DNA of 64,000 nt from Macrostomum lignano (GCA_002269645.1 NIVC01000199.1:186001-250000); one strand, 5' to 3'; counted from the stretch's first letter, positions 14,464-56,560 are shown. Translations and numbers: made by a program. The notes: generated by a model from the sequence alone, not told the origin.

Positions 14464-16451
14464 TCAGTCCCGCAGGAAAAGTACACCCCGAATGAAGGCT
14501 CTGCAGATGGGGCACGTCTTCAGCGACTTGGCGCACACTGAGCAGCAGGCCACGTGACCACAGTCCAGCAGCATGATGTTCACCTCCTTGTCCATGCACA
14601 CCTTGCACGTCTTCCAGTCGGTTGTGTCTCGGGTCTCGGCTGTTGGTTCAGAGACTCCCGAATCTGAGACATCCTGCTCTCGAAGAACGCCTCCGGGTCC
14701 TGCGACTGCTTGCGCATGCGGCGGCTCTCGGTGAGCATGAAGTCGAGGAACAGCTCCGATGTGGTAAAATCATCGCCTCGCTGTCTGAGATGCAGCTCTG
14801 TGAACAGTCTCACTTGCAGGGCGGAGAATCCGAGTTGAGTGAGCAGTCTCACAACGGGCAGGTCGGCTCTCGCTTTGATGTCTCTGGCCTCGACTCTGAA
14901 CTCGACTCCAGGTGTGACTGCGAGAGCCTCGTCTGCGCGACTGCTGCGGACTGCAGTAATGGCAGCGGACCCGTCGACAGCCGCAGCACCAGCTGATGCA
15001 GTTGATTCCGTCTGTACCAATGCAGTGTGATGCTGAGCAGAGGCGCCACAAGTCGGGTGCTGCACGGGAGGCGACAGTCGGTGCACTGCCTGTACAAAGT
15101 CGCTACCTCGCTCCAACAACACGTGAGGACACCGAGGTGACCACCTGGCGTGCTCAACCCACACATCATCGTCGCAGCTCCACTCGCTCATGCGAAGTCC
15201 GCAGCTGAAGCAGCAGGTCGCTCTCTCGGCTTCCGAGTAGAAGAAGCCCGCCTTTGCAAGCAAGTACACTGGCTGCTGAACGAGAGCCGAGTGCAGAGAC
15301 TGCGACCTCGCTTGGTAGGTCTCGAACTGTGCGTGTTTGGCAGTCACACTCGATGGATCACTCTCCAGACTGTGCTGTAGAGCGGACAGGTTCGTGAGAG
15401 CTCTCTCGGAGCACGCAGATCTCGCTACCTCACTCGACACTGGAAGCTGAGGACCCTTCATCATGTCGAAAGCAACCAGCTTATCGTCCACAACGCGTTC
15501 TTCATTCGTTCCAATAGTTGCGCGTGTCGCCAGCGCCCACTCGTTCAGTCCAGCGAACTCCATCGGTGGTAGCTCAGCGACCAGATTCATGCTCCAGTCT
15601 CCGTTCACCATCACTGCTGCATCATCTGCAGTCTGATCACTGCACTGCACTGCCTCTACCAGCTTTGCTGAACTCAAGACTCTTTTTGGCTCTCTGTGAT
15701 CTCGAGGCACGTTGCCGACCTCGACGAACAGCACGAACGGACAGGTGGAGAAGTGGCGTCTGTGAGCCTCTCGGACCTGCTCGCCCGCCTCCCAATCCTT
15801 GAGCACACCCTTGCAGAATGCACACTTTACTCTGTCCGACTCCTGCAGGTAGAAGAATCCGTCAGCAGCCAGATCCGTCACTGACACCAGGTGAGCCGCT
15901 GTGAAGCTGGCATCTGGCAGGTGGAAGGACTGCCACCTGTTCTCCTCTCGTCTCATGTCCCACAGGTGTTGTGGAATCGAGGCCGGCATTCCACTCGTGT
16001 CCCATTGCTGATTGCGGAAGTCCAGAGTCTGCGGCACGGAGGACGCTCTGCCACCAGGTGTGCTGTTGTTGTAGTACCGCAGCACCTTGCTCTTGCCTGT
16101 TTGGTTTCGAATCGCTGCATTGAGGTGTTCATGAAATCTTCTGCTACCCTTTAGTGCGTAATCAACTACAATTTTTTGAAGCTCAAGTAAGAGATCCGGC
16201 TTTTTGTTTCCTTCAACGGCTTGTTTGGCGATTGTGTACGTTATTGTCTTTCTGTGTTCGTCAACCACTTGCAGGCTGGTTATTTCTTGGAAGAACTGAA
16301 AAATGGTTTCTCGTCTGCTCTCTGATGCGGCGTTTCTTTGATTTGAAGTCAGATTTTGAAGCCAGCGCTCGGTGTTCAGAATGGAATTCTGTGATCTCCA
16401 TTGAGCCAGTGTAGTTGATGGCCTTCGAAAGTGTTCTGCTGCATGAGAGGT
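14464..16451 (-). pseudogene. IAP copy 2; 1-bp deletion just before the RING and no in-frame ATG in its unique 5' part (pseudogene, assembly error or spliced 5' end)
   Basis: Core near-identical to copies 1 and 3; GACCCGAGA versus GACCCCGAGA at ~14632 shifts the RING into another frame (stop at 14464-14466). The frame is open back to 16451; the ORF-track start at 16268 is GTG. Confidence 0.85.
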
Positions 16452-17789
16452 TTATTTTGTGGAAATAATTTAATTTAAAAGCTGATCGACAGTGGCAAAA
16501 GTTTTTTAAACGTTTCAATAAAGTAAAAATTGAATGAAATTACCTGCGTTTCGGCGTCGATGCCTTTGCTGTCCGACGTTAGCAATTATAACAAGTGACA
16601 GACTGTTGCTTTAAATATCGATATTAAACCGCTTTTGGCTTGCTTATTTCGACTTTCTGTGATATGAATATTGTCGCCTGTCCATACCCCGGTATACTCG
16701 TATGTACGTGTATATATACTATTTTAAGCTGGAGCTTAAAACGTACCCCGCAATAATGCACTAGCTAAAAATAGCTATTACAAACTATCTAAATATACTA
16801 AATCTTATATTCTATTTATGGAACGAACCAGTTTATTTCCAGTTGCAAATTAACAATAGCTGTTGCGTTGCAATGAGCAGTGAAAGATGGTCAATTATGA
16901 AACGTATTTATTAGTGACGCATAGAGGCTTTTTTAGTTCGTTCTTTTACTTTTTTAGCTTCTTACGAAATATGATAACAATTATAATAGTCATTGATGCA
17001 GAAAACATTGATGCAACTATAATTACTCAACAAAGCTGCTCCCTACCAGACCTGTAAAATTTTTACATTTCACAGCCATTTTTAAAGAAAAAATTCACGA
17101 TGCCTCTTTTCAGCTTGTCTTATAGTTGGAGAACTTTTTGTTTGTTGGTTAGGGATAAAAATGATGGATAATCGCAAGGGGATGCCTGGGCTATAAGCTA
17201 GATGTGACACCACCTCCCAACCCCAGCTATTGCAGCTCCTGAGCTTTCAAGTTCTCCAATTTAAGTTACTTTATGTACAAATTTCATCACTTGGCTGTTT
17301 TAAATAGAGGAAAAAATAGTAAGGGCTTGTCAAGTGTCAGCTTCGAGCGTATTAATTTTGGTTTGTTTTACTTGTTTTCCGTTCTGAGAAACCAACCCTG
17401 GACCGGCCGTTTCCGTTTCCGCCGAGACAGGTGCGCATTGCGTCCTAATGTGAATCATATAATACCAAAATGTATTACCTAAATGTCTCTTGCATCTTGC
17501 GTTAAACCCACCGGTGTAGATGCCAATGAGGCTGGCGACGTTGATAGATATGCAGTATTTTGTTTATCTAGGTGTTTGGTTTATTTGCATTTTTTGTACC
17601 ACCCGCAGGCTTCAAATCAAGCCAGAATGCCGACGCAGCAGAGCAGAAGCCAAGCGAATAAATAAGGTCACCAACCCTTTCCACCCCCTCCAGCAAGACA
17701 GGTCTGGTAGGTGCCCCCGTCAGATAAAACAGGTTACAGAACCGGTAATAACCGGCCCCGAAATTAAAGTCACTTGTATTTTGTTTAGC

Positions 17790-17889
17790 ATATTTTATTA
17801 TATCTTTAGCAGGTTAAATTTCTCTAATCGATCACATAGATTGATAGATAGATAGATAGACACAGACAGACCATTTTTAGTATATAGGA
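17790..17889 (-). mobile_element. Helitron-type 5' terminus
   Basis: Reverse complement reads A|TCCTATATACTAAAAATGGTCTGTC.. plus (CTAT)n, matching 2576-2640 and 25171-25210. Confidence 0.6.
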
Positions 17890-18234
17890 TTTCTGCTGAA
17901 TGAGTTTAAAAGCAATATACACTCAGCAATATGTTAAAGTTTCCACCCCAAAACTAGTGGTCAACTTTCCCCAGATCTCAGCCCCAAATGACGCAATTCA
18001 CACCACGTCCGCAGGCTCGTATGGGCTGATTTCGCAATCAAGCTGATATGAATAAAAATAAACTGATATTAGTGTATTATCAATGATAATATTAAGAATT
18101 AATTCCATCCAATTCATTAATTAATTTAATATTCAACTGATGAAAAATTCAGTCCACCACTGAATGACCACTGGCTTCGGGGTGGAAACTTTAGCATGTT
18201 GCTGAGTGTACATGTACTCTCGTAGGGGGCTTGA

Positions 18235-19265
18235 CTGGGTGGCTGCGGATCGCTCTTCCGATGTCAACCGGCGTCGCGTGGGCGACGTCAACCGGAGAGG
18301 CGGCTCAGCGTGCTTGGCTACGCCGACGAATTCGCCCTGCTGTTCTTAAGTGTCGAGGGCGCTCAGTGACAACTGGACAAGCTAGTTGCTGTTGTGGCGA
18401 GTGTCAGCCACTTGATCAACACGCAGAAAACCGTCGTGCTCTCGTGCTCCGCGTGCCGGATGACATCGAGGCTGCGATTTTGTGCCGAAGCACTGTTGGA
18501 CAGGCGGCAGAGCTTCCGCGTTGTCAGCAGTTCGTCTACCTCGGCGGTCTGGTTTCCGTCGTCCGCGAAGATTTGCCGCGTCGCCGCGGGCTTGCCTGGG
18601 CTGCCTTTCGTTCTGTGAGGGCAGTCCTGCAGTACCTGACCGCCAGAGGGCGGCGTTGTTTTAGGCGGTGATCGAGACCGTCCTGTTATACAACGCCGAG
18701 AACTGGACGCTGACGGAGTCGATCGAGCAGCAAGTTGACGCGGCGCACGCTTGCCTGCTGCGTGCCGCCTTCAAGATCGGCTACAAGCGAGTGACCAACG
18801 CGGCTTTGTATCGCCGCGCCAGTTTATTCCGTCCAAGCGACCTGTTGCGCCGCCGGCGACTCCAGCTGTCAGGCCACATCCGCGCCGAGTCGTACTGCGC
18901 ACAGCCGGTGCAGGAAATGAGAAACACCGTGCTGATGGGCGAGGACAGCCCCCCGAGACGGCCGGTAGGACGGGCCATGGGTGACTGTAATCTGCTACTC
19001 GGGTGAGTGTGGCCGGAAAAATTGGCCCGAGGGTTGACCTCGAGACACAGCCCCCGCGTGAAGGGTGTATCGTTGGCATGCAGCCGGTGCAGGAGGTGCT
19101 GCTGATAACGCTGCAGGCACCCTACCGATGGGGACAGGTGCGCGCTCTGCCTGCTTGCTGACGCCGGCGCCCCGGATTCGGCCGGCGTTTGTGGTGTTCG
19201 TTCGCGACCTGGCCTTGAGACGCGCCTTGAGACGCTAACAGAGTATTTTGTGGTCTTTGTTGTCA
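18235..19265 (+). mobile_element. degraded RTE-type LINE 3' fragment containing a 165-bp insertion
   Basis: LGYADE (YADD-like RT motif), IETVLLYNAENWTLT, several frameshifts, degenerate TTG tail; homologous to 8770-9329. Confidence 0.85.
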
Positions 19266-19284
19266 TTCATATAGACATATAATA

Positions 19285-19545
19285 ATAATGGAGGGCGGTT
19301 ATTGGCCCGAACGCAACGACACCGTCTCACAACCAGCGCTGAAGCAATTCAGCCCATTCCACTGACTCCTGAGCATACAAGTGCGCTAATACTGTACGCA
19401 GACACGCACTCATAGACACGCTCACACAGGGTGTACAGCCGCTCTGACTTTCTAATCGCCAGACATGTACACTCACTGTGCCTCGGAGTTGAGCCTCGTG
19501 GCGCGAGAGTCAGATGCATTTACCACTGAGCTGATCTGCACCTAA
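19285..19545 (-). mobile_element. tRNA-derived SINE, family B
   Basis: On - strand: A-box-like CAGCTCAGTGG and B-box-like GGCTCAACTCC; body GTGTACATG..CTGTACAC..GCTCAGG..GGAATGGG shared with 35150-35495 and 62760-63115; (ATT)n tail. Confidence 0.7.
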
Positions 19546-19547
19546 AC

Positions 19548-19643
19548 CGATAATAAATAATAATAATTGATTACACCTGCCCCGAAATCGAACCCCCGAC
19601 CTTCAAGTCGTGAGTCCGACGCTAACCATTAGGCCCCCATCCA
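19548..19643 (-). mobile_element. short tRNA-derived SINE head with (TTA)n tail
   Basis: Reverse complement GGGGCCTAATGGTTAGCGTCGGAC..TTGAAGGTCGGGGGTTCGATTTC, resembling the head of the SINEs at 37902 and 53542. Confidence 0.6.
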
Positions 19644-19778
19644 GAGAGGTATACTAAGAAAAAAATACTTAAAAAAAGAAAACAACGTTAGCAGACAAAC
19701 AAACCATTTCTAATAACTTGTTCCGGTTGTACCAACTAAACCTGCTCGTAAAGATGAAATAATGACAGATAACGCTGA

Positions 19779-20223
19779 TCTGTCCGAATCCAATGCTGTT
19801 CTGTCCGAATCCTATGCAGATCTGTCCGAATCCAATGCAGATCTGTCCGAATCCAATGCAGATCTGTCCGAATCCAATGCAGATCTGTCCGAATCCAATG
19901 CAGATCTGTCCGAATCCAATGCAGATCTGGCCGAATCCAATGTCCGAATCCAGTGCAGATCTGTCCGAATCCAATGTCCGAATCCAGTGCAGATCTGTCC
20001 GAATCCAATGCAGATCTGTCCGAATCCAATGCAGATCTGTCCGAATCCAATGCAGATCTGTCCGAATCCAATGCAGATCTGTCCGAATCCAATGCAGATC
20101 TGTCCGAATCCAATGCAGATCTGTCCGAATCCAATGCAGATCTGTCCGAATCCAATGCAGATCTGGCCGAATCCAATGCAGATCTGTCCGAATCCAATGC
20201 AGATCTGTCCGAATCCAATGCAG
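19779..20223 (+). repeat. 21-bp minisatellite (TGCAGATCTGTCCGAATCCAA)
   Basis: Tandem array; same unit as 26008-26350 (reverse). Confidence 0.96.
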
Positions 20224-20515
20224 ATCGGCGGCAATCGAGTAACCGAGTGCCAGCTCGAAGTCTTCCTGCGCCCCTGCATCGTCAACGGAGTCCGCTGCCC
20301 GCCGGATGGCTCGATGAGCTTTGAAAATATAGCGAATTACGAGCTACATGGAGAGCACCAAGATGTTCTCCAGAGCACTCGCTGGCGAGCTGCCCAGGGA
20401 ATGTGACTGCGAAGACACCTGCGAGACTTGCAACCGTCGCTGCATGTACGCCATGATGAAGGTGCTCGTTCTCGAGTACAACGTCCCGGTCAGAATTCAT
20501 GTTTACGAGTCTTAA
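20224..20515 (+). pseudogene. frameshifted paralog of exon 2 of the secreted Cys-rich protein gene at 25575-26423
   Basis: GGNRVTECQLEVFLRPCIVNGVRCPPDGS, then a net +7 nt shift at ~20320-20347, then MESTKMFSRALAGELPRECDCEDTCETCNRRCMYAMMKVLVLEYNVPV; no signal-peptide exon found upstream. Confidence 0.8.
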
Positions 20516-21564
20516 ATGTGTTCACAAATAACTCACAGCTTGTTAGTTCATCGATCATTGAGTTCAACCGCTGAAGCGTTTTGTGGTACTTGCTTGGTAG
20601 TTGCCATAAAGAGAGGATCGAGAAAAGCGGGAAAACGCGGTACGCCGTCTAAAAAAGAAATACCTTCATTGCCTAAAATAGCCTATGTGAAAGCAGTACT
20701 CCGAGAAATAATCATGTGACAAGCGTCAAGCCAAGATTATTTATAGCTTTACAGCCCTAGCTTTAATTCAGGTTTTTATAGTTCATGCAAACAGCGAGTG
20801 TCGATCTTCCAGCGCACACTGTTTATCTTGTGCAGAGCTCCCCCGGCTTTTCCATGACTAGTGTACTGTACTGCATTGTACTCGCGTGATAAAAATAACT
20901 GGCGGCTTTCCCATGAGTAAGTGTACGTTAATACGGCAGTGTAATTCACGAGATAAAAATAGCGCTGAAACTCAGGAAATTTCTTGAAGGTTCCATCAGA
21001 TTGCTCCGATTTAAACATATATAAATAACGAGCAAAAACTGGACTGTATTAAAGAATTATAATTCTAGCAGAATTACTAGATTTACAATCCGCTGGATTT
21101 AACGGAAAGTCGCCAACTCTATTTTATCTCATCGACTAAATCGTTACCTTGTAGTGGTAAGTGCTTAAAGCGTGTCTTATTCTTTGCTAAGATCATATTT
21201 ATCCGCTGTGAGGTCCCTAGATAGGCCACTCATTCAATGCTTTAGATGCCATAAACTCTGATGTGAGCTGGATTTATGGTCGAGACTAACTGAAATTTGT
21301 TATTTTTTCAGTTTTAGAGCCGCGGAATGTGTCCAGAACCGTTTGAAGGACCACAGCGGTTAAGCCAAGTAATTTTTTGACTAAGCATTGTGAACCATAC
21401 TGTTTTTAAGCTATACTTGGAACTGCATAAATTAGAGTAAAAATTTATTTTTACCGGCTGGCATTTATTGAGCCACTACTTTCCAAAACGTGCAGTTTTA
21501 CAGCGTCGTAACATCATACCACTGAAATTTCAAAACGAAAACCCAAATTGTTAGTACACTTCAT

Positions 21565-21800
21565 ATACCCAAATTTACACATACCCGAAATTTCACATAC
21601 CCAAATTTTCACATACCCAAATTTCACATACCCAAATTTTCACATACCCAAATTTTCACATACCCAAATTTTCACATACCCAAATTTTCACATACCCAAA
21701 TTTTCACATACCCAAATTTTCACATACCCAAATTTTCACATACCCAAATTTTCACATACCCAAATTTTCACATACCCGAAATTTCACATAGCAAAAGTTC
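21565..21800. repeat. 16-bp minisatellite (TTTTCACATACCCAAA)
   Basis: Directly visible tandem array. Confidence 0.95.
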
Positions 21801-22782
21801 ACATACTTAGAAGTTTACGTCGAATTGCACAATGTCGAAATAACCTTTAGAGATAAGACTATAAACTAGAATTTTAAAATAGGTAATTTCCCTAATTTCA
21901 CACTTTGCTCTTTCCGTAATTTCTATACTCACTTATCTGGATACGAAGGTCCTGTGTGATAACCTGATATTGTTAGGATAGTCTCCAAATCTGCTGGAAA
22001 TGTTATTTTTCAGCTGATATTATGGGAATTATAAAACTTCTGCCCAACCTTAATTAAATATTGAATACTAGGTCCGGGAGCTCAGCTAGGATGTGCAATT
22101 TTCTGTTTAAGAAATGAAACAAAATGGATGACTGCTGGTAATAAGTGTCCTAAGTGTAAGTGTGGTCTTCTAAGTGTAAATTCGACGTTGTGAAATTTTA
22201 GAGTTGTGAAACCAACTGTCGCTGTATTATAACAAAACGTAAAAATCAAAGATGGAGTAATTTTTAGAAAGCCAATTTCCAGGAGAAATACACTGCGGAG
22301 ATTGGAAAAATTTATTTTTTCCATAAAAAAATCAATAAATGCATTTGATATGGGTCAGTGAAGATTACCCCTTCTTCAATTGCACAGCAACAATATAAAA
22401 CACAATATTCACCTGTTTCCATGCTAAATTAAAGGAATGGTAATCTCAACTGGCCTGAATCAAATGCAAATATTGATATTGTAACGAAAAAATGATTTTT
22501 CGTGGAAATCGGCCTCCTAAAAACCTACCAGATTTATGAGTTTTACGTCCTGGTATACTACAGTGTTCGTTTTGTAAAACTTCGGAGTTGAAAGTAAAGT
22601 TCACATTTCGCTGATATAAGATACTTTCCTTAGATTTATAACAGTCTAGCACTCTCTAATGGCAAATATTTAGGCCTCTAGTTATCTTTTGCCATAAAGA
22701 ACGCCCATTACGAGCGTAAATAAGGATCTGTAGATAAACAAAGTTACATGAATTTCTAATCTACTAATGTTTTAGCCAAAAA

Positions 22783-24822
22783 ATGCACTCGACAAGACAA
22801 CAAAGTTACTTCCCTCAAGCATCCGCCGGTGTGGCAAAGAAGTTTCGAGCGGCCAACGGAACAGGCAGCTCTGTGGAAAATATTATGCATTTAATTTCCA
22901 GTCTCACACAACCTGCAAGCGGCTGCAACTTCTATGTAACTTTAGACGACAAAACACTTCAGCGGTTGAACTCAATGGTCGATGAGGTCACAAGCTGCAC
23001 TCGAGACCGACTTCCGCTAGACAACATGGAACTAATTCAGGAACACCAAAAAATGAGCTTCACAGGTGAAATGTTTCAAAAGTTGCTTCAACATGCAGCC
23101 ACAGAAATTTCAAAGTTCCTGATGATGAATGTTAGACAGAATACTCAGGCTTCAGAAATGAATTTACGGGCAGCGCAACAAGGAAATAAGGCTCAAACAG
23201 GTAAGAGCAAGGTGCTGCGGTACTACAACAACAGCACACCTGGTGGCAGAGCGTCATCCGTGCCGCAGACTCTGGACTTCCGCAATCAGCGATGGGACAC
23301 GAGTGGAATGCCGGCCTCGATTCCACAACACCTGTGGGACATGAGACGAGAGGAGAACAGGTGGCAGTCCTTCCACCTGCCGGATGCCAGCTTCACAGCG
23401 GCTCACCTGGTGTCAGTGACGGATCTGGCTGCTGACGGATTCTTCTACCTGCAGGAGTCGGACAGAGTAAAGTGTGCATTCTGCAAGGGTGTGCTCAAGG
23501 ACTGGGAGGCGGGCGAGCAGGTCCGAGAGGCTCACAGACGCCACTTCTCCACCTGTCCGTTCGTGCTGTTCGTCGAGGTCGGCAACGTGCCTCGAGACCA
23601 CAGAGAGCCGGAAGGAGTCTCGAGGTCAGCAAAGCTGGTAGAGGCAGTGCAGTGCAGTGATCCGACTGCAGATGATGCAGCAGTGATGGTGAACGGAGAC
23701 TGGAGCATGAATCTGGTCGCTGAGCTACCACCGATGGAGTTCGCTGGACTGAACGAGTGGGCGCTGGCGACACGCGCAACTTTTGGAACGAATGCAGAAC
23801 GCGATGTGGACAATAAGCTGGTCGCTTTCGACATGATGAAGCGTCCTCAGCTTCCAGTGTCGAGCGAAGTAGCGAGATCTGCGTGCTCCGAGAGAGCTCT
23901 CACGAACCTGTCTGCTCTGCAGCACAGTGTCGAGAGTGATCCATCGAGTGTGACTGCCAAACACACACAGTTCGAGACCTACCAAGCGAGGTCGCAGTCT
24001 CTGCACTCGGCTCTCGTTCAGCAGCCAGTGTACTTGCTTGCAAAGGCGGGCTTCTTCTACTCGGAAGCCGAGAGAGCGACCTGCTGCTTCAGCTGCGGAC
24101 TTTGCATGAGCGAGTGGAGCTGCGACGATGATGTGTGGGTTGAGCACGCCAGGTGGTCACCTCGGTGTCCTCACGTGTTGTTGGAGCGAGGTAGCGACTT
24201 TGTACAGGCGGTGCATCGACTGTCGCCTCCCGTGCAGCACCCGACTTGTGGCGCCTCAGCTCAGCGTCACACTGCATTGGTACAGACGGACTCAACTGCA
24301 TCAGCTGGTGTTGCGACTGTCGACGGGTCCGCAGTCCACAGCAGTCGCGCAGACGAGGCTCTCGCAGTCACTCCTGGAGTCGAGTTCAGAGTTGAGGCCA
24401 GAGACATCAAGGCGAGAGCCGACCTGCCCGTTGTGAGACTGCTCACTCAGCTCGGATTCTCCGCTCTGCAAGTGAGACTGTTCACAGAGCTGCATCTCAG
24501 ACAGCGAGGCGATGACTTTGCCACATCGGAGCTGTTCCTCGACTTCATGCTCACCGAGAGCCGCCGCATGCGCAAGCAGTCGCAGGACCCGGAGACGTTC
24601 TTCGAGAGCAGGATGTCTCAGATTCGAGAGTCTCTGAACCAACAGCCGAGACCCCGAGACACAACCGACTGGAAGACGTGCAAGGTGTGCATGGACAAGG
24701 AGGTGAACATCATACTGCTGGACTGTGGTCACGTGGCCTGCTGCTCAGTGTGCGCCAAGTCGCTGAAGACGTGCCCCATCTGCAGAGCCTTCATTCGGGG
24801 TGTACTTTTTCTGCGGGACTGA
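22783..24822 (+). CDS. inhibitor of apoptosis protein (BIR-BIR-UBA-like-RING), intronless, copy 3, 679 aa
   Basis: Same BIR, UBA-like and RING motifs as copy 1; intact ORF from ATG; unique 137-codon N-terminus. Confidence 0.95.
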   Translation: MHSTRQQSYFPQASAGVAKKFRAANGTGSSVENIMHLISSLTQPASGCNFYVTLDDKTLQRLNSMVDEVTSCTRDRLPLDNMELIQEHQKMSFTGEMFQKLLQHAATEISKFLMMNVRQNTQASEMNLRAAQQGNKAQTGKSKVLRYYNNSTPGGRASSVPQTLDFRNQRWDTSGMPASIPQHLWDMRREENRWQSFHLPDASFTAAHLVSVTDLAADGFFYLQESDRVKCAFCKGVLKDWEAGEQVREAHRRHFSTCPFVLFVEVGNVPRDHREPEGVSRSAKLVEAVQCSDPTADDAAVMVNGDWSMNLVAELPPMEFAGLNEWALATRATFGTNAERDVDNKLVAFDMMKRPQLPVSSEVARSACSERALTNLSALQHSVESDPSSVTAKHTQFETYQARSQSLHSALVQQPVYLLAKAGFFYSEAERATCCFSCGLCMSEWSCDDDVWVEHARWSPRCPHVLLERGSDFVQAVHRLSPPVQHPTCGASAQRHTALVQTDSTASAGVATVDGSAVHSSRADEALAVTPGVEFRVEARDIKARADLPVVRLLTQLGFSALQVRLFTELHLRQRGDDFATSELFLDFMLTESRRMRKQSQDPETFFESRMSQIRESLNQQPRPRDTTDWKTCKVCMDKEVNIILLDCGHVACCSVCAKSLKTCPICRAFIRGVLFLRD

Positions 24823-25093
24823 TGAACTCGTACAGTGGGTGGACTGTGAATTTTTTATACCTGGTAGTCAATAATGGTATTTCTCAACGTTTACTTTGCT
24901 TTTCTATCAAAAATGTATCTTTATCATTTTCTTTTTGTTTTTTGAACTGTCTTTCAGTTTTAAAAGCTTTTGTTTTCAGCTATTGCGTGAGACAATAGTT
25001 TGTTTGTCCCACTCCGTATTTCCGCCTATTTATCCAGTCCAGTCTTACATAAAATTCGGTTTAAAGCTGTCTAATTACGAGCGTACTTGCTTA

Positions 25094-25350
25094 TCTAAAT
25101 ATACTAAATCTCTAATATTTGTTTGTATGTTTGTCCATAACGCTCTAGAGATTGCAATTCTTGACAGATTTCCATATACTAAAAATGGTTTGTTTGTTTG
25201 TTTGTTTGTACGAAATCGATTATCTCCCAAAAGGCTTGACCGATTTTCTTTGAACTTGCACTGTTCGATCAGAATTTTTTCCGTGAGGGTACATGCATCG
25301 TGGCTAAGAAATTACTCGATGTTAAAGAGATTAAATATTCGAAAAAAAAT
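25094..25350 (+). mobile_element. two adjacent Helitron-type 5' termini
   Basis: A|TCTAAATATACTAAATC at 25094 (also at 16788) and TCCATATACTAAAAATGG + (GTTT)n at 25171; the downstream ~180 bp matches 2600-2760. Confidence 0.55.
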
Positions 25351-25574
25351 CTCTAAAACTTTAAGACTAAAGCCATTAATCAAAAAATTGAAAGACCTGA
25401 AATTACCCATGCAGACTTTGCTCCTTAGTCTTCAGTCATGCCTTGGCAGTGAAGCAGGGGATAATTAATTTATTTGGTGGTATATTTATTACTAGTAATT
25501 AAACCAGTGGAAGTTTAATAGAATTGTTTAATCTATTCATCGTAAAACATCCACCTAATTCTGATCTGCAGCGA

Positions 25575-26423
25575 TCAGCCTTGAAAACCGAAGAATCGCT
25601 TCGACTGAGGAGCACCGACGGGAATGTTGTACTCGAGGATGAGCACCTTCATCATGGCGTACATGCAGCGCCTGTTGCACCTCTCGCTGCTATCGTCGCA
25701 GTCGCATTCGCTGGGCAACTCGCCAGCCAGCATCCTGGTGGCCATCTTGGTGTTCTCCATGTTCTCCACGATCTTGTCGTAGCTCAGAGAGCCATCCGGC
25801 GGGCAGCGGACTCCGTTGACGATGCAGGGGCGCAGGAAGGCTTCGAGCTGGCCCTCGGTGAGCCGGTTGCGGCCGCCCGGCTGAGCAGACTGGGAAAGAG
25901 CGAGTTAAGATTGAGTATGCACAGAATTATTAGCTGCAATTATGAGTATTGAGAGCGTTCATTTACATGTAAGAGTCACGTCTGTATTGGATGTGGACGG
26001 GCATCTGGACGGGAATCAGCACTGGATTCGGACAGATCTGCATTGGATTCGGACAGATCTGCACTGGATTCGGAAAGATTTGCACTGGATTCGGACAGAT
26101 CTGCACTGGATTCGGACAGATCTGCATTGGATTCGGGCATATCTGCATTGGATTCGGACATTCTGGAAGATCTGCATTGGATTCGGGCATATCTGCATTG
26201 GATTCGGACATTCTGGAAGATCTGCATTGGATTCGGGCATATCTGCATTGGATTCGGACATTCTGGAAGATCTGCATTGGATTCGGACAGATCTGCACTG
26301 GATTCGGACAGATCTGCATTGGATTCGGACAGATCTGCACTGGATTCGGAGATTCACAATAAATAGAGGTCTTACCACAGTGGCCACGATGGCAAAAAGA
26401 GCAGCACAGACGATGAGCTTCAT
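25575..26423 (-). CDS. two-exon gene for a 120-aa secreted six-cysteine protein / candidate peptide precursor (exon 1 26423-26376, exon 2 25889-25575)
   Basis: Exon 1 MKLIVCAALFAIVATV, GTAAGA donor, polypyrimidine-CCCAG acceptor, phase-0 join to SAQPGGRNRLTEGQLEAFLRPCIVNGVRCPPDG..CDCDDSSERCNRRC..QSKRFFGFQG*; GC-rich codon usage; a paralog conserves the frame and cysteines. Confidence 0.8.
26008..26350 (-). repeat. 21-bp minisatellite inside the intron of the secreted-protein gene
   Basis: GATTCGGACAGATCTGCATTG units, the reverse complement of the array at 19779-20223. Confidence 0.95.
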
Positions 26424-27264
26424 GATTGAGAGATGGTTAAGCTGTTCTCAAGTTGCAGTTGCAGTGATCTGGCTGAGGAAAACGATTTGCTGCCTCCCTA
26501 AAGTTTCGAATGCCGTTAAATAGACTTTTGACAGCAATTATTGCAACGGAATGTGTCGAATCTGACTTTAATGGTTTTCTTCCGGCCGGGGGGGGGGCGT
26601 ATGGGATGGTGAAAATTGGAGGGTCGACAAAAAGAGCAGGAAGCTTTTAATGCGAGGTCATTATGTAGAGTTTTTCGACAATATCCAACTTATAGTGTCA
26701 TTCGGTACGGAAACTGTAGATAAGCCTTCACAGTTTAAATAGTGCTCGAACAGTTTTCCCTTAAAAGAGAAATGTCTGCTAAAAAATGCTCTACCGCTTT
26801 GGTCTGGAGCAGTAAACGCGTCTGACGCTCGCTCCAGAACACCTGGTTCGATTCCCTGCGTGGCCACATTCATTTCTGGAGTTTGCGCCTGCGCCTGCGT
26901 ACATTATTGGCGCCTTGTACTCCCATGTGCTCTGAAATTAGAATTGCCTTAGTCGCTGAAGGCGTCGCACCAGGGGCTCATAACCTTCATTAGTATGTCC
27001 CCGTTTAAAGGATGTCATTTTGCGCAGAATGAGGAATGTTAATGGCTACTGACAGTTTATTTTGAAGTTTTGTAGCTGGAACGTTTTTTAATAGATTGGC
27101 TCGCTTTCGATGTCTCCTGGTCGTCAAGGATGGAAAAACTGCTTAAGAAATAAATAATTTGGAACCAATCTTACTTAAATAGGTTTTAAATGGGCAACGA
27201 TGTTGACCACAAATGCTTTCATCGCTTCAAAACAGTCTTTATTTTATTAAAGTATAAGCCTTCG

Positions 27265-27697
<433 letters not shown>

Positions 27698-30600
27698 TTA
27701 CCCAAAATATTGCTGTGACCATGCAGGCGTCCAAATGATACTAATCCAGTTAAGGACTGAGAGGGATTGTACACTGTGAAAATAAAAGTAGCGTAATCTA
27801 AAACAAAAAGCTACGTTGAGGTCATGTCAAGCATGGAAGAAGCGTCGGTTTTAAAAATTGTCTTGAGACGTCAAGACTGACGGGAAATTGCTGAGATGCC
27901 AAGGCTTACTGGGGGATTACTGAGATGTCATGGCTGAGAGTTCAGAAGCTACATGTAGTTTATTCAAAAATCTTTAGTCCATTCCTTTGTTGTTGGCTCT
28001 CCAACGCTTTCTATCGGGGGTGCTTGCTATCGAGTGATCGCTTGCTGTCTATGTCTGGGTTGCTTACGATTGCGGGAAGGAAGCCTAGAGAGGCTTAGAA
28101 TGTTTATGAGCGTAGTTTTATACGATGATCAATAGCAAAAATACGAAAGCTACTTTAAATGGCAGATCTATTTAACTTGATCAAATGACACAGCTTTCTA
28201 ATACTTTTGCTGGGTCTGCCAGCTAATTTTACTTTCTGCAAAATGAATTAATGTCAACCGGACAAGAGGAAATGTGCATACGTTTTGGTTTCTACAACAG
28301 TATCTCAGCTTGATATGTATTTAGTTCACGAATCGATTCAGATATGTATTTAACCACTTCCGTGACTGAGCAGAACCTGGATATTTAGGTCCACTATTAG
28401 AATTTCGTTGGTGTATGGAGGGCCCGTTGCACTGGAGACAGTGTAGGGACCTCTGCGAAGTTGATTTTGTTCGTACGCTAACACCCACTGTTACAGGCTC
28501 TAATAAATAAGCAGCGTTTTCACTAAGCGTATGTTACTCGTATAGCATCAACAACCGGAAATGAAAGTATTGGAGTTTGGAATTTTTATCATCTTTTTCC
28601 GGTTCAGTTTATATTGCTGCTAGTTAATTGCTGGAGTTTTTGGAGCGATTATAAAGACTGAATGGTGACTGACACGTGATGCATCAGCTAATAGTTCGGC
28701 TATTAACAGTGGGAATACCAAGCCATTTTTCCGCCCGTAGAACTACCAAGAGGGGGGAAATCACCCCTGGCAATTTTTTTGCTGCGCCGTATTGGAGCAA
28801 CGCAGGCACAGGAAATTCAAGAACACGGGCTAACTTTTTGTTGAGCACCTTCTCGTCGATATTCGACGATTCTGCCAGAAGGTTGGATTTTTCCCAGTGC
28901 AGCCTTGCCAAGTCTCGAAGTTTCATTAGCACGTCGATTACATTTGTCTGCATCAGCTCTGACTTTGTTGGTCACTGGATTTTACCCAGACGGAGCTTCT
29001 GAACCTTCAACAGGTGGCACCAGGTGACTATGGACAACCTACTGCGAATTTCTCTAGTTTCGCTGATCAAGCCTCGACAGTGGGCAAGCCTCAACTGCTG
29101 GACATCCTAGGCTAGTCTCTCAAGCATTCCGTTATCACCCGGACGCCGTCGGCACGTCCAACAGATTACACCAGGCGACTATGGACGCGCTGTTGCGAAT
29201 TTCTGTGATTTCGCTGACCGGAACAGTTGCTCTGATCAGTTGCTCCTGTACAATGAGCTGGTTTTGTTTGAGGCTAGCTCTTAGACTTTATTTTGATCTT
29301 AATCTTAGTCTTACTCTAGTGGGTGTCATTTTGCTCTCCAGAGGGGGGCAATTGGTTTGTTTTAACTGTCCAAACTTCACACTGACACTGAGGTAGAGCA
29401 AACTTCATCGCATCCATAGCAGTGACTTCATTAACTTCGATCTTTTCTGCAATCATCTTGCCTCTTTCGAACGGATTCTGGCTCATCTGCATAAAAAAGA
29501 AAAGTGCTGCGTAAGTGATAGAATGATTAAACCAGCAAACTTGTTTACCTCAAGGGCCAGGTAAAAAACTTTGCTAATGCTGCGGCCCGGATGGGAGAGG
29601 ACAGAAGAGAGGAAAGGCGAGAGAGATAAGAGAAGAGAGGAATGAAGGGAGAGGAGAAGAGAAGATGAGAGAGGTGGACCTTGAGGTAGTCGCCGTTTCT
29701 TACGACTCGATTAAAGAAACATCTAATTCTGCTTCAATAAGGATTCCCCATCATTTGCCCTGCTCTCAGTTGAGTCTGTAAACTGATAGCCGCCATGAAG
29801 CATGCAGAGCATGCAAGCAGACAGGTAAAGAGAATGCAGTGAGACAAAAGGAAGCATCAGACACATTCGTCCCAAATCCCGGTATCTGAAACCGGTAAAA
29901 CGGATATTTCAGGAAAAGCAATACCGTCCTCAAGCATTGTGAATTTAAATCTGAATGCACTGAGGAATTATTCAAGGTGTAAAAATGAGCATTACTTTGC
30001 TGCACCAAAAGACGTCCCAAGCATCTCCGCAGAGCGGCGGCCTGGCTTTCTCCATAGGTCGTCAAGGCCCTACAGCTCCTTCTATCATTTTTCTAGTCTT
30101 CCAACTAGCCAGACAGTCAAAGAGACGCCCGTTGGATTCAATTCCCTTTCCGCTGTGCACAGCCGGCACGAATTGTCCTTCTGCTTTCTTAGGCGAGCTC
30201 TCACCTTTGATCTCAATGTCTATCCAGCTGGCCGTGAGCTGGGGGGCCTCAAGGAGGCCTGGAAGAAGCTTCATGGCTTTCCATCAGCGACTTAAATAAT
30301 CCTGATTAGGGTTAAGTGTTAGTACTTTCGTTTCCCTCTTTGGAACAATAGCCATTACGCCTCCTCCTTGCACTTTGATACTATGACATCATTGACTATG
30401 ATGTCATCGAAGCTTCAGCCGTGGCATGCGCGACATGTCCGTCCGATAAAGAACTTCTGATTTATTTTCGTCATACATCCGAGTGATGCACTGGCTCACT
30501 CCGTCCGGCCAAGCGATAAAGTTGATGAAAAAATTTTTCTTTCGCTTTCGCTTTCCGCATTTTGAGCAGGTTTTGCTGTCCGGGGAATTCTCCGTCAGGA

Positions 30601-30745
30601 TACGATTCAGGAAGTGTTTCTCGCCAGTAACACTCACCAGTTACCACTTATAGTTGCATCCAAATGGCCGAATGTCTTTAGCCGCAGTTCCCTCATGCTG
30701 AACAAATTTCGATATCTGTTCAAAGTTCCTGGCGAGGCCGACAAT

Positions 30746-31111
30746 ATTCTCCGCCCTGCAAGTGAGACTGTTCACAGAGCTGCATCTCAGACAGCGAGGC
30801 GACGACTTTTCCACATCGGAGCTCTTCCTCGACTTCATGCTCACCGAGAGCGCTGCATGCGCAAGCAGTCGCAGGACCCGGAGGCGTTCTTCGAGAGCAG
30901 GATGTCGGAGATTCGAGAGTCTCTGAACCAACAGCCGAGACACCGAGACACAACCGACTGGAAGACGTGCAAGGTGTGCATGGACAAGGAGGTGAACATC
31001 ATGCTGCTGGACTGTGGTCACGTGGCCTGCTGCTCAGTGTGCGCCAAGTCGCTGAAGACGTGCCCCATCTGCAGAGCATTCATTCGGGGTGTACTTTTTC
31101 TGCGGGACTGA
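30746..31111 (+). pseudogene. IAP copy 4: 3' fragment (end of UBA-like segment + RING) with a frameshift
   Basis: Near-identical to the last ~360 nt of copy 3; 1-bp loss at ~30851; shares ~70 bp of 3' flank with copy 2. Confidence 0.9.
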
Positions 31112-31436
31112 TGAACTCGTACAGGATTTGGACTGTGAATTCTACTAGGATGGGTCCCAATGGCTTCGTCAAAACAGTTTTAATATCTTATGAACGATGG
31201 CACCTAGGCACTGATTATATTAATTATGCATGTAATTTTTAATAGAAGTTCTTCTTGTCGAGCATTCAAAGGTATTCCCTTGTATGCTCATGTAGTCTCT
31301 TTTAGGCTATCAGCCGTATACCCGCATCATCAAATTAAAGTTTTTTGTTAAATAAGTTTTAAAAGCTTAGGTGCACAGTTTTACATAAGATTTGTTCAGT
31401 AATTTGTTTTCCTCTTCATATTTTTGCTTGCTTATA

Positions 31437-32130
31437 CAACAACAACAACAGAATACGCAGTTAGCGTCACAGGGCGCGCCTCAAGGCCATGTCGCGGATG
31501 AACGCTATGCCGCCAGTCGAATCCGGGGCGCCGGCGTCAGCCAGTAGGCAGTCGACGAAACGCCGAGTGCGCGCCTGTCCCTGTCGGTACGGTGCCTGCA
31601 GCGTTAACAGCAGCACCTCCTGCACCGGCTGTGGGCAGTACGACTCGGCGTGGATGATGTGGCCTGCCAGCTGGAGTCGCTGGCGGCGCAACAGGTCGCT
31701 TGGACGGACCAGACCACGCGGTGATACAATACCGCGTTGGTCACTCGCTCGTTGCCGATCTTGAAGGCGGCGCGCAGCAGGCCAGCATGCGCCGTGTCAA
31801 CTTGTTGCTCGAACGACTCCGCCAGCGTCCAGGTCTCGGCGTTGTACAGCAGGACGGTCTCGATCACCGCCTAAAACAACGCCACCCTCTGGCGGTCAGG
31901 AAAGGCCTCGGACTGCAGGACTGCCCTCACAGAACAAAAGGCAGCCCAGGCAAGCCCGCGGCGACGCCGCAAGTCCTCACGGACGCCGGGAACCAGACCG
32001 CACGACGTTTTTCTGCGTGTTGACCACCAGGCCGACACTCGCCGCAACAGCAACTAGCTTGTCCAGTTGTCGCTGGGCGCCCTCGACATTTGAAGACAAC
32101 AGGGCGACATCGTCGGTGTAGCCAAGCAAC
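31437..32130 (-). mobile_element. RTE-type LINE 3' fragment
   Basis: LLGYTDDVAL RT motif, IETVLLYNAETWTLA, (GTT)n tail at 31437-31450; homologous to 8770-9329. Confidence 0.85.
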
Positions 32131-54952: not shown

Positions 54953-56560
54953 TCACTTTTCCTCAGCCTCCGTCTTCTTGGCTTCAGCAGTCTTGGTGGC
55001 AATCGCGGCTTTCAGTAGCTGCTCCTCTGAAAAGAACATTCCGTGAATAGCGGAGGGCACTGAGACGCCCTTGAAGTCGACCTTGGCCACCTCAGTCATG
55101 CTCTTGGCATCCAGAATGACAAGGAACAGAGACCGTTGATCCACAGTGCCCACTACAGAGGCGAGCAGAAGGCCATGATCTTCACTACAGCGATCAGGAT
55201 GCTCAACGAATATCGCCTCGGATGGTTCGCAGCCTGGAGCATTCCATTGAAGAACTTCCTCGGTCTGCCAGTCCAGCTTCACGATGCTGGAGTTGGACGA
55301 TGCGGCCCCAGACGCCTCGGTAGTAGACATCGATTTGCCAACACCATAACCGTACCGGTATGGCTCACCGTTGTACCGGTAGTTTATCTGGGGAAACTCG
55401 ATGGCTAGTCGACACGCAGGCTCCGTGCATTTCACGATCTCCGTGCTGCCAAGCTTCAGTCGGTAGCGACGAAGCGTCACATCTGTCTTTGGCAGCTCAC
55501 TCAGCTGCTGCATCTCTTTCAGCGACAGTCGCTTTATTAAATCTCCAGACTTGTAGGCGCTGAGATCTATGACGATCTCTACACTTCCGTCCTTGCATTC
55601 CACCTCGTATGCGTTCATGTGATGGAAGGTGAAAAAGGCCTCGGCTGTAAGCGTCTGCACTAGCTTGCCGTCGGCGCGAGACACGACGTGAAGCAAAGAA
55701 CCGTAGCCGTCATACCAGTTCAGACAGTCTCCGTAAGACAAACCGAATATTCCTGCGGCTATGAGGCGGGGAATGTTCAGCGCTAGAGGAGACTCAACCA
55801 GAACTAGATAGTTGCGAGTCATGGCGAAGCTGTGAAAATACGCCGGATTGAAGCGCCACCTCGAGGGTATTTTTGCTACAACTTCGGCTTTGTCCAAGCC
55901 TCCGGGCGGGATGCGTGCGAATACGTACTGGGGACCCTCACGATCACGAAATGCTGTGCCGACGTTCAGAACACTGCCGTCCGACTCAATGTGCGGGTGT
56001 GCCGTCACCGTGTTGATAGGTATTACCTTGTTCAGGTCGACTTTTTCCAGACAGTCTAAAGTTCTGGGATCGATTCGGTTAAGAAAGTTGGTCTCGGTAG
56101 TGGCGTAAACTTGATCTCCAATCGGGAAGATATTCACGAAGGTGTTGTCAGACACCATCGACCTCAGTTTTGCCTCCTCCTCGCTTGGCCAAAAATAAGA
56201 AGCGAACCGTCCTAGCCACGATTTGCACGGATCTGGAAACGTCCGCGTGCCGAACTCGCTGACAACGATGCGCTTGTACGCCATGTTTGTCGTGTACGCG
56301 TCCGAACGGAGGAATTGGCTGGTGAACTCCACCTGACCGTTCGAGATGCTGAACTTTCGCAACAGTGCCAGGCCATCGAAGTAGTGATGGTACTGAGTGT
56401 CGCCCACTTCAAACAGACCCGGTCCGTTCCGAATGAGGCTGCCGCTCAGCCAGGTGGGTACAGAGCCTCCGTCTCGGACTACTCCTCGCACTGGTTCGGT
56501 GTTCTCTCCGCTGGCAGACGTGTACAGGGCAGCACCCAGGTTAGTTAATTTATCGGACAT
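54953..56560 (-). CDS. carotenoid oxygenase (BCO1/BCO2/RPE65/NinaB family), intronless, 535 aa
   Basis: WLSGSLIRNGPG, HYFDG, SEFGT..PDPCKS, four iron-ligand His contexts (TAHPH, YFHSF, TFHHMN, AIHGMF), EFPQINY and PSEAIFV. Confidence 0.95.
   Translation of the reverse strand: MSDKLTNLGAALYTSASGENTEPVRGVVRDGGSVPTWLSGSLIRNGPGLFEVGDTQYHHYFDGLALLRKFSISNGQVEFTSQFLRSDAYTTNMAYKRIVVSEFGTRTFPDPCKSWLGRFASYFWPSEEEAKLRSMVSDNTFVNIFPIGDQVYATTETNFLNRIDPRTLDCLEKVDLNKVIPINTVTAHPHIESDGSVLNVGTAFRDREGPQYVFARIPPGGLDKAEVVAKIPSRWRFNPAYFHSFAMTRNYLVLVESPLALNIPRLIAAGIFGLSYGDCLNWYDGYGSLLHVVSRADGKLVQTLTAEAFFTFHHMNAYEVECKDGSVEIVIDLSAYKSGDLIKRLSLKEMQQLSELPKTDVTLRRYRLKLGSTEIVKCTEPACRLAIEFPQINYRYNGEPYRYGYGVGKSMSTTEASGAASSNSSIVKLDWQTEEVLQWNAPGCEPSEAIFVEHPDRCSEDHGLLLASVVGTVDQRSLFLVILDAKSMTEVAKVDFKGVSVPSAIHGMFFSEEQLLKAAIATKTAEAKKTEAEEK

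What the first reader, a model, noticed from the sequence alone, without database searches (positions are those of the whole stretch)
25575..26423. Hidden two-exon gene for an unrecognised secreted six-Cys protein ending in a candidate amidated peptide
Seen: splicing 26376 to 25889 gives 120 aa with a hydrophobic signal peptide ending VSA|Q, a core C-x6-C ... C-x-C-x6-C-x3-C, and a C-terminal KR-FFGFQ-G-stop. Known: KR is a prohormone-convertase site, a terminal Gly is the amidation donor, and an N-terminal Gln can cyclise to pyroglutamate. Inference: a precursor releasing a disulfide-bonded domain plus FFGFQ-amide. The Cys spacing does not match the insulin, CHH/ITP or ShK patterns as I recall them, so it may be a lineage-specific hormone, pheromone or toxin family. 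The ORF track shows only fragments of it.
Basis: partly seen in the sequence, partly recalled or inferred. Interest (0 to 1): 0.75.

Follow-up and report, generated by a model that had tools for sequence, protein, structure and literature searches.

The report
Annotated flatworm secreted six-cysteine protein gene
The two-exon gene is real, but it is already annotated in the flatworm Macrostomum lignano as a hypothetical protein; it belongs to an uncharacterised, apparently Macrostomum-only family of small secreted three-helix, six-cysteine proteins, and relatives do not support the proposed amidated tail peptide.

Summary
Joining 26423-26376 to 25889-25575 on the minus strand (GT..AG intron, 486 nt) gives the stated 120-aa protein.

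It is not hidden. The window is Macrostomum lignano contig NIVC01000199.1. The product is 100% identical to GenBank PAA50938.1/PAA88221.1 (hypothetical protein Mlig031165g1/g2), and the gene span is the same 849 nt.

A full HMMER scan of 1.84 billion proteins found only M. lignano paralogues, in about eight groups. They share RPC[IV]xxxxNCP ... P.EC.C ... RC.R.CYYA..K. Each domain is preceded by a phase-0 intron.

There is no Pfam or PDB sequence hit. An AlphaFold model built with the family alignment (pLDDT 81) shows a three-helix core with no Foldseek neighbour and a disordered tail.

KR-FFGFQ-G occurs only in this paralogue. Other tails differ: RFPGKRSV, RRRR, DKRR, or none. The conserved unit is therefore the cysteine domain, not a peptide.

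A frameshifted partial copy (intron repeat plus exon 2) lies at 19771-20515.

Tissue and function remain unknown. My best reading is a secreted, disulfide-locked extracellular protein whose tail may be trimmed or amidated. Interest is modest.

The parts
26376..26423 (-). Exon 1 coding part: M1-V16, most of the signal peptide (MKLIVCAALFAIVATV)
   Evidence: It is the first in-frame start. It is identical to the annotated CDS of PAA50938.1.
25890..26375 (-). Phase-0 intron of 486 nt, GTAAGA...CTCTTTCCCAG. Positions 26015-26355 are a 21-nt minisatellite (unit ATCTGCACTGGATTCGGACAG on the + strand) with 50- and 100-nt higher-order periods.
   Evidence: Paralogues have an intron at the same position and phase.
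25575..25889 (-). Exon 2: S17-G120 plus the stop codon. It contains the end of the signal peptide (SA|Q, cleavage inferred after A19), the whole six-Cys domain and the tail.
   Evidence: GC 0.61 and GC3 0.83.
25614..25880 (-). Mature folded core, Q20 to about V108 (mature residues 1-89). Three helices at mature 10-23, 35-53 and 67-85. Cys at mature 20, 27, 60, 62, 69 and 73.
   Evidence: AlphaFold2 with the 14-sequence family alignment: pLDDT 81, pTM 0.71, core blocks 88-94. Family conservation.
25578..25601 (-). Tail motif K113-R114 (25601-25596), FFGFQ (25595-25581) and terminal G120 (25580-25578). It is the end of a longer tail that is not conserved in the family; mature residues 91-102 are predicted disordered.
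   Evidence: Sequence. pLDDT below 50 for mature residues 91-102. Absent from all paralogues.
25469..25490 (-). Two AATAAA poly(A) signals, 84 and 100 nt downstream of the stop codon
19771..20226 (+). Second copy of the intronic 21-nt minisatellite, belonging to the partial duplicate
20227..20515 (+). Degenerate copy of exon 2. It is 82.6% identical in DNA, about 72-77% in protein by segment and 70% over the whole alignment. It has 7 extra nt near 20332, which shift the frame. It has no exon 1 and no acceptor region. Its tail is VRIHVYES* in place of GAPQSKRFFGFQG. Probable pseudogene.
   Evidence: The frameshift is identical in the sister contig. No gene is called there.

Best explanation
This is Mlig031165, a transcribed two-exon gene of the flatworm Macrostomum lignano. 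It encodes one member of a Macrostomum-restricted multigene family of small secreted proteins.

**Proposed mechanism**

1. Shown from sequence; cleavage inferred: a 19-residue signal peptide directs the protein into the ER and is cut after VSA. This leaves an N-terminal Gln that can cyclise to pyroglutamate.
2. Modelled: the roughly 90-residue core folds into a three-helix bundle.
3. Inferred: three disulfides lock the bundle. C62-C69 (mature numbering) is suggested because these two Cys are lost together in the four-Cys second domains of the two-domain paralogues. The remaining four Cys then tie the end of helix 1 and its loop to the start of helix 3.
4. Inferred: the folded domain is the conserved, functional product. 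It acts outside the cell as a binding protein or ligand, that is, a gland- or neurosecretory-cell secretion.
5. Inferred: the disordered C-terminal tail is a fast-evolving appendage specific to each paralogue. In this paralogue it could be cut at KR and/or have its terminal Gly converted to an amide. Nothing shows that FFGFQ-amide is a conserved bioactive peptide.

The family grew by local and tandem duplication. Each domain is one phase-0-bounded exon, which also explains the two-domain members.
For: - **Identity with an existing model.** The product is 100% identical over 120 aa to PAA50938.1/PAA88221.1, with the same 849-nt gene span, on two contigs of GCA_002269645.1.
- **RNA-based annotation.** That assembly's annotation was derived from RNA-seq by StringTie/TACO/TBONE (PMC5730564). 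That this gene model comes from that annotation is inferred from its name (BOX15 was not found in the paper). A spliced transcript therefore probably underlies the model.
- **Coding signals.** Canonical GT..AG, GC3 0.83 against AT-rich flanks, and poly(A) signals.
- **Family.** HMMER over 1.84 billion representative proteins gave seven real relatives, all M. lignano; three further hits were spurious repeat proteins. Invariant residues are C20, C27, P57, R71, C73 and Y75. Near-invariant are P19, C60, E67 and A76.
- **Gene structure.** A phase-0 intron at the signal-peptide/domain boundary occurs in Mlig031165, Mlig014137, Mlig007900, Mlig001682 and Mlig029205. In Mlig029205 a second phase-0 intron precedes the second domain.
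- **Tandem arrangement.** The two-domain paralogues lie in tandem.
- **Structure.** With the family alignment the AlphaFold2 core is confident (pLDDT about 90). The tail, mature residues 91-102, is below 50.
- **Tails.** They are unalignable across paralogues.
- **Constraint.** dN/dS is about 0.41 against the degenerate copy over 86 codons, which indicates constraint on the domain.
Against: - There are no expression, localisation or peptide data for this gene. The gene ID and five paralogue IDs were absent from the held supplements of six papers; a seventh paper had no supplement held as text.
- The disulfide map is inferred from one co-loss event and helix geometry. Model coordinates could not be inspected.
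- Two of about eight paralogue groups carry Gly-based amidation signals, and several end in KRR, RRRR or KK. This pattern is commoner in prohormones than in ordinary secreted proteins, so processing may matter more than I assume.
- 'Macrostomum-restricted' rests on databases that appear to lack other Macrostomum species.
Confidence: 0.6

Rival explanations
1. The gene is a neuropeptide prohormone. PC2 cuts after K113-R114. PAM converts FFGFQ-Gly to FFGFQ-amide, which is the bioactive product. The Cys domain is a co-released 'associated' protein.
For: - The signal peptide, the KR site and the terminal Gly are all present.
- The tail is predicted disordered, so it should be accessible to a convertase.
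- M. lignano has a PC2 homologue expressed in the nervous system (PMC4490696; PMC12435804).
- Paralogue Mlig014137 ends QQRFPGKRSV, and [KQ]RF[FP]G aligns loosely with the KRFFG found here.
Against: - The peptide is not conserved in any paralogue, whereas the 'spacer' domain is the conserved part. That is the reverse of typical neuropeptide precursors.
- The degenerate copy has a different tail.
- 'FFGFQ' appears in no relevant paper.
- A dibasic site within about 15 residues of the end, together with a terminal Gly, is expected by chance in roughly 1% of proteins (my estimate).
Confidence: 0.15
2. A non-signalling gland secretion. The protein would be an effector or structural component of an exocrine secretion, such as prostate/seminal fluid, an adhesive, rhabdite or pharyngeal gland product, or a saposin-like lipid-binding or antimicrobial protein.
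For: - It is a lineage-restricted, duplicated family of small secreted Cys-rich proteins.
- M. lignano prostate cells express many secreted transcripts, and 31 of 76 prostate-limited transcripts had no BLAST hit (PMC5977470).
- UniProt automatically labels some paralogues 'Saposin B-type' or 'WAP domain-containing'.
Against: - No family member matched SapB or WAP in Pfam, even at E <= 10.
- No saposin, or any other, fold match was found.
- Most domains are acidic to neutral (pI 4.8-6.5), which is not the cationic profile of lytic peptides.
- Family motifs were absent from the held supplements of the seminal-fluid screen, though those files are small and may carry no sequences.
Confidence: 0.2
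3. Annotation artefact or non-functional locus. A transcript exists, but no stable protein is made.
For: No protein-level evidence exists. The intron holds an unstable minisatellite, and a decayed copy lies nearby.
Against: - The ORF is intact and identical on two contigs.
- GC3 is strong.
- The domain and the intron position are conserved across about eight paralogue groups.
- dN/dS is below 1.
Confidence: 0.04

Closest known systems
M. lignano paralogues: Mlig007900/032223, Mlig014068, Mlig014137/003397/013351, Mlig001682/030151, Mlig028719, Mlig029205, Mlig032940, A0A1I8G7C1
   Same: - Signal peptide and a phase-0 intron before the domain.
- Shared motif: RPC[IV]xxxxNCP ... P.EC.C ... RC.R.CYYA..K.
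- Six Cys and three predicted helices.
- 27-45% identity to this protein.
   Different: - The C-terminal tails are unrelated. Only this paralogue has KR-FFGFQ-G.
- Some paralogues have two domains. Their second domains have only four Cys.
Crustacean hyperglycaemic hormone / ion-transport peptide family (CHH/ITP/MIH)
   Same: By design only (my knowledge of the family): a secreted, largely helical hormone of about 70-100 aa with three disulfides, often with a pyroGlu N-terminus and an amidated C-terminus, made from a signal-peptide precursor.
   Different: - The Cys spacing differs. CHH is C-x15/16-C-x2-C-x12-C-x3-C-x8-C; here it is C-x6-C-x32-C-x-C-x6-C-x3-C.
- There is no Pfam hit, no PDB profile hit and no Foldseek hit.
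Insulin/relaxin superfamily
   Same: Cysteines are arranged 2 + 4 along the chain, giving a three-helix, three-disulfide secreted product.
   Different: - The spacings do not fit B-chain C-x11-C or A-chain CC-x3-C-x8-C.
- The middle segment is a confidently folded helix with no flanking dibasic sites, so it is not a C-peptide.
- No sequence or fold match was found.
Saposin-like proteins (SAPLIP; UniProt's automatic label for two paralogues)
   Same: A small helical secreted domain with six Cys.
   Different: - The saposin pattern (C-x2-C ... C ... C ... C-x5-C, with nested disulfides) is not met.
- No family member hit SapB_1 or SapB_2 at E <= 10.
- There was no Foldseek match to any saposin structure.
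Single-copy C-terminal neuropeptide precursors (for example, the pigment-dispersing-factor type: signal peptide, associated peptide, KR, peptide, Gly)
   Same: The same order of parts: signal peptide, long N-terminal part, KR, a short C-terminal peptide ending in Gly.
   Different: In those precursors the short peptide is the conserved part. Here it is the only non-conserved part.

Membership tests
Mlig031165-type Macrostomum six-Cys family (unnamed) | Core motif: P-C-x6-C in helix 1 and its loop, then P-x2-C-x-C-x6-C-x-R-x-C-x-Y-A at helix 3 | tested here: met
   Invariant and near-invariant columns in alignments A1 and A2. phmmer E-values to paralogues are 1e-14 to 4e-8.
Mlig031165-type Macrostomum six-Cys family (unnamed) | N-terminal signal peptide and a phase-0 intron directly before each domain | tested here: met
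   five paralogue groups examined, including both domains of Mlig029205.
Neuropeptide / peptide-hormone precursor (generic) | Signal peptide, a dibasic cleavage site and a Gly amidation donor | tested here: met
   Read directly from the sequence.
Neuropeptide / peptide-hormone precursor (generic) | The released peptide is the conserved element among homologues | tested here: not met
   The tail cannot be aligned across paralogues, and KR-x5-G is unique to this gene. The degenerate copy ends VRIHVYES.
Neuropeptide / peptide-hormone precursor (generic) | Expression in PC2-positive neurosecretory cells, and detection of the processed peptide | not testable with these tools
   No expression or peptidomic data could be reached. 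Supplement searches found nothing.
CHH/ITP/MIH (Pfam Crust_neurohorm) | Family HMM match and the characteristic six-Cys spacing | tested here: not met
   No Pfam hit at E <= 10 for this protein or for any family member. The spacing differs. No PDB profile or fold hit.
Insulin/relaxin | B-chain C-x11-C, A-chain CC-x3-C-x8-C, and an excisable C-peptide flanked by basic sites | tested here: not met
   The spacing is C-x6-C and C-x-C-x6-C-x3-C. No dibasic sites flank mature residues 28-59, and that segment is modelled as a confident helix. No Pfam or PDB hit.
ShK / SXC domain | Match to the ShK HMM and its six-Cys pattern within about 35-40 residues | tested here: not met
   No Pfam hit. The Cys here span 54 residues with a 32-residue gap.
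Saposin B-type / WAP (UniProt automatic names of paralogues) | Match to the SapB_1/SapB_2 or WAP HMMs, and the saposin fold or the four-disulfide core | tested here: not met
   None of the 14 family sequences hit these models at E <= 10. Foldseek against PDB gave a best E of 3.5 and TM below 0.3.

The most novel reading that the evidence does not exclude
The family could be a Macrostomum-specific class of folded protein hormones or pheromones with a previously unseen three-helix, three-disulfide fold. They would be protected at both ends (pyroGlu N-terminus, amidated or trimmed C-terminus), in the way CHH is in arthropods. The rapidly diverging tails would tune receptor specificity or release small co-transmitters such as FFGFQ-amide.
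Probability: 0.12. Interest if true: 0.55.

Novelty: new variant of a known kind. Interest (0 to 1): 0.3.

Why it matters
**Scope.** The gene itself is already in GenBank, so the finding adds no new gene.

**What is new**

- About eight 'hypothetical proteins' of M. lignano form one family.
- Each domain of this family sits on its own exon, bounded by phase-0 introns.
- The core can be modelled with confidence and has no structural or sequence relative in Pfam or PDB.
- Several members carry C-terminal processing-type signals.

**If followed up.** M. lignano is a transgenic, RNAi-amenable model for regeneration and sexual selection. If the family turns out to be signalling molecules or seminal-fluid modulators, it would give that model a new, lineage-specific ligand class.

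**If not.** It is one more orphan family of secreted proteins, which is common in flatworm genomes.

Tried and rejected
**Sequence and family searches**

1. Pfam on the protein and on all 14 family sequences at E <= 10 gave only four single-member noise hits: PLA2_2 (0.05), a tospovirus nucleocapsid family (0.099), Kazal_2 (0.14) and DUF7545 (0.18).
2. PDB sequence search with the protein and with the family profile gave nothing at E <= 10.
3. Two profile searches of the 5.8-billion-protein word-indexed database found no non-Macrostomum relative. That index even missed known paralogues, so its reach is limited.
4. Three long repetitive proteins in the HMMER list (P0006, P0008, P0011) were rejected as spurious multi-stretch hits.

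**Structure**

5. Single-sequence AlphaFold was poor, with pLDDT 49. It was replaced by the run with the family alignment.
6. Foldseek against PDB and against BFVD gave no match: best E 3.5 and 0.78, TM <= 0.38.

**Literature**

7. 'Mlig031165' appears in no full text. This ID and five paralogue IDs are absent from the held supplements of six M. lignano papers; a seventh had no supplement held as text.
8. Family motifs are absent from the held supplements of the seminal-fluid screen.
9. 'FFGFQ' occurs only in two unrelated papers.
10. McVeigh et al. 2009 (PMC2749192) is not held.

**Within the window**

11. I looked for a second exon 1, promoter or acceptor that would make the 19.8-20.5 kb copy a complete gene. 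None exists.
12. ARAGORN found no tRNA in the window, although the sequence just upstream of the partial copy looks tRNA-like.

Full report
**1. Observation**

Reading the minus strand of 25400-26600 and splicing in a script reproduces the finding exactly.

- The ATG is at 26423. Sixteen codons (MKLIVCAALFAIVATV) run to 26376.
- The donor is GTAAGA. The intron is 486 nt and ends CTCTTTCCCAG at 25890.
- Exon 2 is 25889-25575. It encodes SAQPGGRNRL...SKRFFGFQG and the stop codon.
- The product has 120 residues. It has a classic signal peptide: Lys2, a 14-residue hydrophobic core, and V-S-A at positions -3 to -1, followed by Gln.
- The six cysteines are spaced C-x6-C-x32-C-x-C-x6-C-x3-C.
- The ATG is the first possible start after an in-frame stop.
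- The intron is mostly a 21-nt minisatellite with higher-order periods of 50 and 100 nt. A 21-nt unit is seven codons, so the array stays open in several frames and produces the spurious 90-193-aa ORFs.

Coding signals are strong. Exon 2 has GC 0.61 and GC3 0.83. The 400-nt flanks have GC 0.33 and 0.43. Two AATAAA signals lie 84 and 100 nt past the stop.

**2. Source and prior annotation**

- The protein is 100% identical over its full length to 'hypothetical protein BOX15_Mlig031165g1/g2' of Macrostomum lignano: PAA50938.1, PAA88221.1 and UniRef A0A267DNS2.
- It is encoded on NIVC01000199.1 and NIVC01003532.1 of assembly GCA_002269645.1. The called gene spans 849 nt, exactly the interval of the finding.
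- Window 15575-36423 is 100% identical to the first contig.
- The second contig is a 99.84%-identical duplicate, and the gene, intron included, is 849/849 identical on it. This fits the redundancy that the genome paper describes for this neopolyploid (PMC5730564).
- That paper states that the annotation is a genome-guided RNA-seq assembly (StringTie, TACO, TBONE). The gene model therefore most probably reflects a spliced transcript. I could not inspect the reads, so this step is an inference.
- The gene is not hidden. It is annotated but uncharacterised.

**3. Relatives**

- A full HMMER scan of 1.84 billion representative proteins returned 11 hits. One was the query itself.
- Three were long repetitive proteins hit in many short stretches. 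I reject these as spurious.
- The other seven are all M. lignano proteins. With their close copies they make about eight paralogue groups:
  - Mlig014068 (137 aa);
  - Mlig014137/003397/013351 (118 aa);
  - Mlig007900/032223 (108-109 aa);
  - Mlig001682/030151 (128 aa);
  - Mlig028719 (124 aa);
  - the two-domain proteins Mlig029205 (193 aa), Mlig032940 (192-219 aa) and A0A1I8G7C1 (174 aa).
- Two profile searches of the word-indexed 5.8-billion-protein set added no other organism.
- Alignments show invariant C20, C27, P57, R71, C73 and Y75, and near-invariant P19, C60, E67 and A76 (mature numbering). The consensus is RPC[IV]xxxxNCP ... P.EC.C ... E.C.R.CYYA..K.
- Every member begins with a hydrophobic signal sequence. 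Three have a predicted N-terminal Gln.

**4. Gene structure**

By exact reconstruction of the annotated proteins from genomic DNA:

- Mlig031165, Mlig014137, Mlig007900 and Mlig001682 each have a single phase-0 intron at the end of the signal peptide. The intron lengths are 486, 99, 404 and 809 nt.
- Mlig029205 has that intron plus a second phase-0 intron just before its second domain.
- Each domain is thus one phase-0-bounded exon. This independently supports the splice proposed here and explains the two-domain members.
- The two-domain genes lie in tandem, separated by an LTR retrotransposon.

**5. Structure and known families**

- There is no Pfam family at E <= 10 for this protein and no meaningful one for any of the 14 family sequences.
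- There is no PDB sequence or profile hit at E <= 10.
- AlphaFold2 on the single sequence was poor, with pLDDT 49.
- With the 14-sequence family alignment it gave pLDDT 81 and pTM 0.71. There are three helices at mature 10-23, 35-53 and 67-85, core blocks score 88-94, and mature residues 91-102 (APQSKRFFGFQG) score below 50.
- Foldseek found no neighbour in PDB (best E 3.5, TM below 0.3) or in BFVD.
- So the insulin, CHH/ITP, ShK, saposin and WAP memberships were each tested and not met.
- UniProt's automatic 'Saposin B-type' and 'WAP' labels on paralogues find no support in Pfam.
- In the second domains of the two-domain paralogues, C62 and C69 are replaced together (ECNYEP...EAAIRAC). This suggests a C62-C69 disulfide. 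It is a single evolutionary event, so the evidence is weak.
- Most domains are acidic to neutral (pI 4.8-6.5), which argues against a cationic lytic peptide.

**6. The tail**

Conservation ends with helix 3. The tails of the paralogues are:

- ...EYNIPVGAPQSKRFFGFQG (this gene);
- ...ELPLVRNQNQQRFPGKRSV;
- a long Arg/Gly-rich tail;
- ...GEPAE;
- ...AAFPDKRR and ...AAFPEKK;
- ...EGEEWRRRR;
- ...YQGFLSERRRRSHRK;
- ...SEAGF.

Three points keep C-terminal processing plausible:

- One other group has a textbook Gly-Lys-Arg amidation signal, and its RFPG aligns loosely with the RFFG here.
- Several tails end in basic runs that carboxypeptidases would trim.
- M. lignano has a neuronal PC2 homologue (PMC4490696; PMC12435804).

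A C-terminal Gly is a direct substrate of the amidating enzyme (general knowledge). Even without KR cleavage the whole protein could therefore end in Gln-amide and begin with pyroGlu, which is the CHH-like 'blocked ends' design.

**7. The nearby copy**

- Window 19771-20226 (+) repeats the intronic minisatellite.
- Window 20227-20515 (+) repeats exon 2 at 82.6% DNA identity.
- The copy lacks exon 1, the upstream region and the acceptor region.
- It carries 7 extra nt near 20332 that shift the frame.
- It ends VRIHVYES*, and no gene is called there.
- The frameshift is also present on the sister contig.
- dN/dS between the two copies is about 0.41 over 86 codons, so the domain has been under constraint for part of that history.
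- The copy lies among three IAP paralogues (two BIR domains; a RING finger in two) that are about 96% identical. This is therefore a region of local duplication.

**8. Verdict**

The gene, the secretion signal, the six-Cys domain and the absence of a named family are all confirmed.

- 'Hidden' is wrong.
- 'Releases FFGFQ-amide' is an unsupported possibility, which I put at about 0.15.
- Best reading, at about 0.6: a secreted, disulfide-locked three-helix protein of a Macrostomum-restricted multigene family, in which the folded domain is the functional unit and the tail is a variable appendage.
- Tissue and target remain unknown. The literature and supplement searches yielded nothing for this gene.
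- Interest is modest. This is an orphan family with an apparently unmatched fold in a tractable model animal, but there is no functional lead yet.

Noticed in passing
window 5513-7483 (+), 14580-16268 (-), 22783-24822 (+): Three long single-ORF paralogues of an inhibitor-of-apoptosis protein with two BIR domains; the RING finger was detected in the first and third only. They are about 96% identical to each other in DNA. The third, which lies between the six-Cys gene and its degenerate copy, has no gene on record in the locus table.
   Followed up: partly
window 26015-26355 and 19771-20226: A 21-nt minisatellite (ATCTGCACTGGATTCGGACAG) with 50- and 100-nt higher-order structure. It is open in several reading frames and generates spurious ORFs of 90-193 aa on both strands. 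It predates the duplication of the gene.
   Followed up: partly
window 19575-19645: Just upstream of the partial gene copy there is a stretch that looks like the reverse complement of a tRNA 3' half (…cgaaatcgaacccccgacc…taaccattaggcc). This may be a tRNA-derived SINE remnant. ARAGORN called no tRNA anywhere in the window.
   Followed up: partly
window 54953-56560 (-): An intact 535-aa single ORF with a full-length RPE65 / carotenoid-oxygenase domain (Pfam E = 2.6e-105).
   Followed up: no
window 50341-51171 (+): A 276-aa ORF with a weak DUF642 match (E = 1.8e-5; 25.0 bits, below the 27-bit cut-off). The adjacent 318-aa ORF at 49344-50300 has no Pfam hit.
   Followed up: no
window 16824-31777 versus L002 (NIVC01003532.1): A second assembly contig is 99.84-99.88% identical over about 15 kb. 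The six-Cys gene and the frameshifted copy are both identical on it. It is a haplotype or recent-polyploid duplicate in Mlig_3_7.
   Followed up: yes
L006 2069-2796 and 10001-10740: Two two-domain family members (192 and 193 aa) lie in tandem on NIVC01000469.1. An LTR retrotransposon pol gene (RT, RNase H, integrase) sits between them on the opposite strand.
   Followed up: partly
protein P0002 (UniRef A0A1I8IYK1): An older M. lignano gene model fuses family member Mlig014068 to a neighbouring tubulin-tyrosine-ligase-like gene. In GenBank these are two separate genes on the same contig, PAA52638.1 and PAA52637.1.
   Followed up: partly
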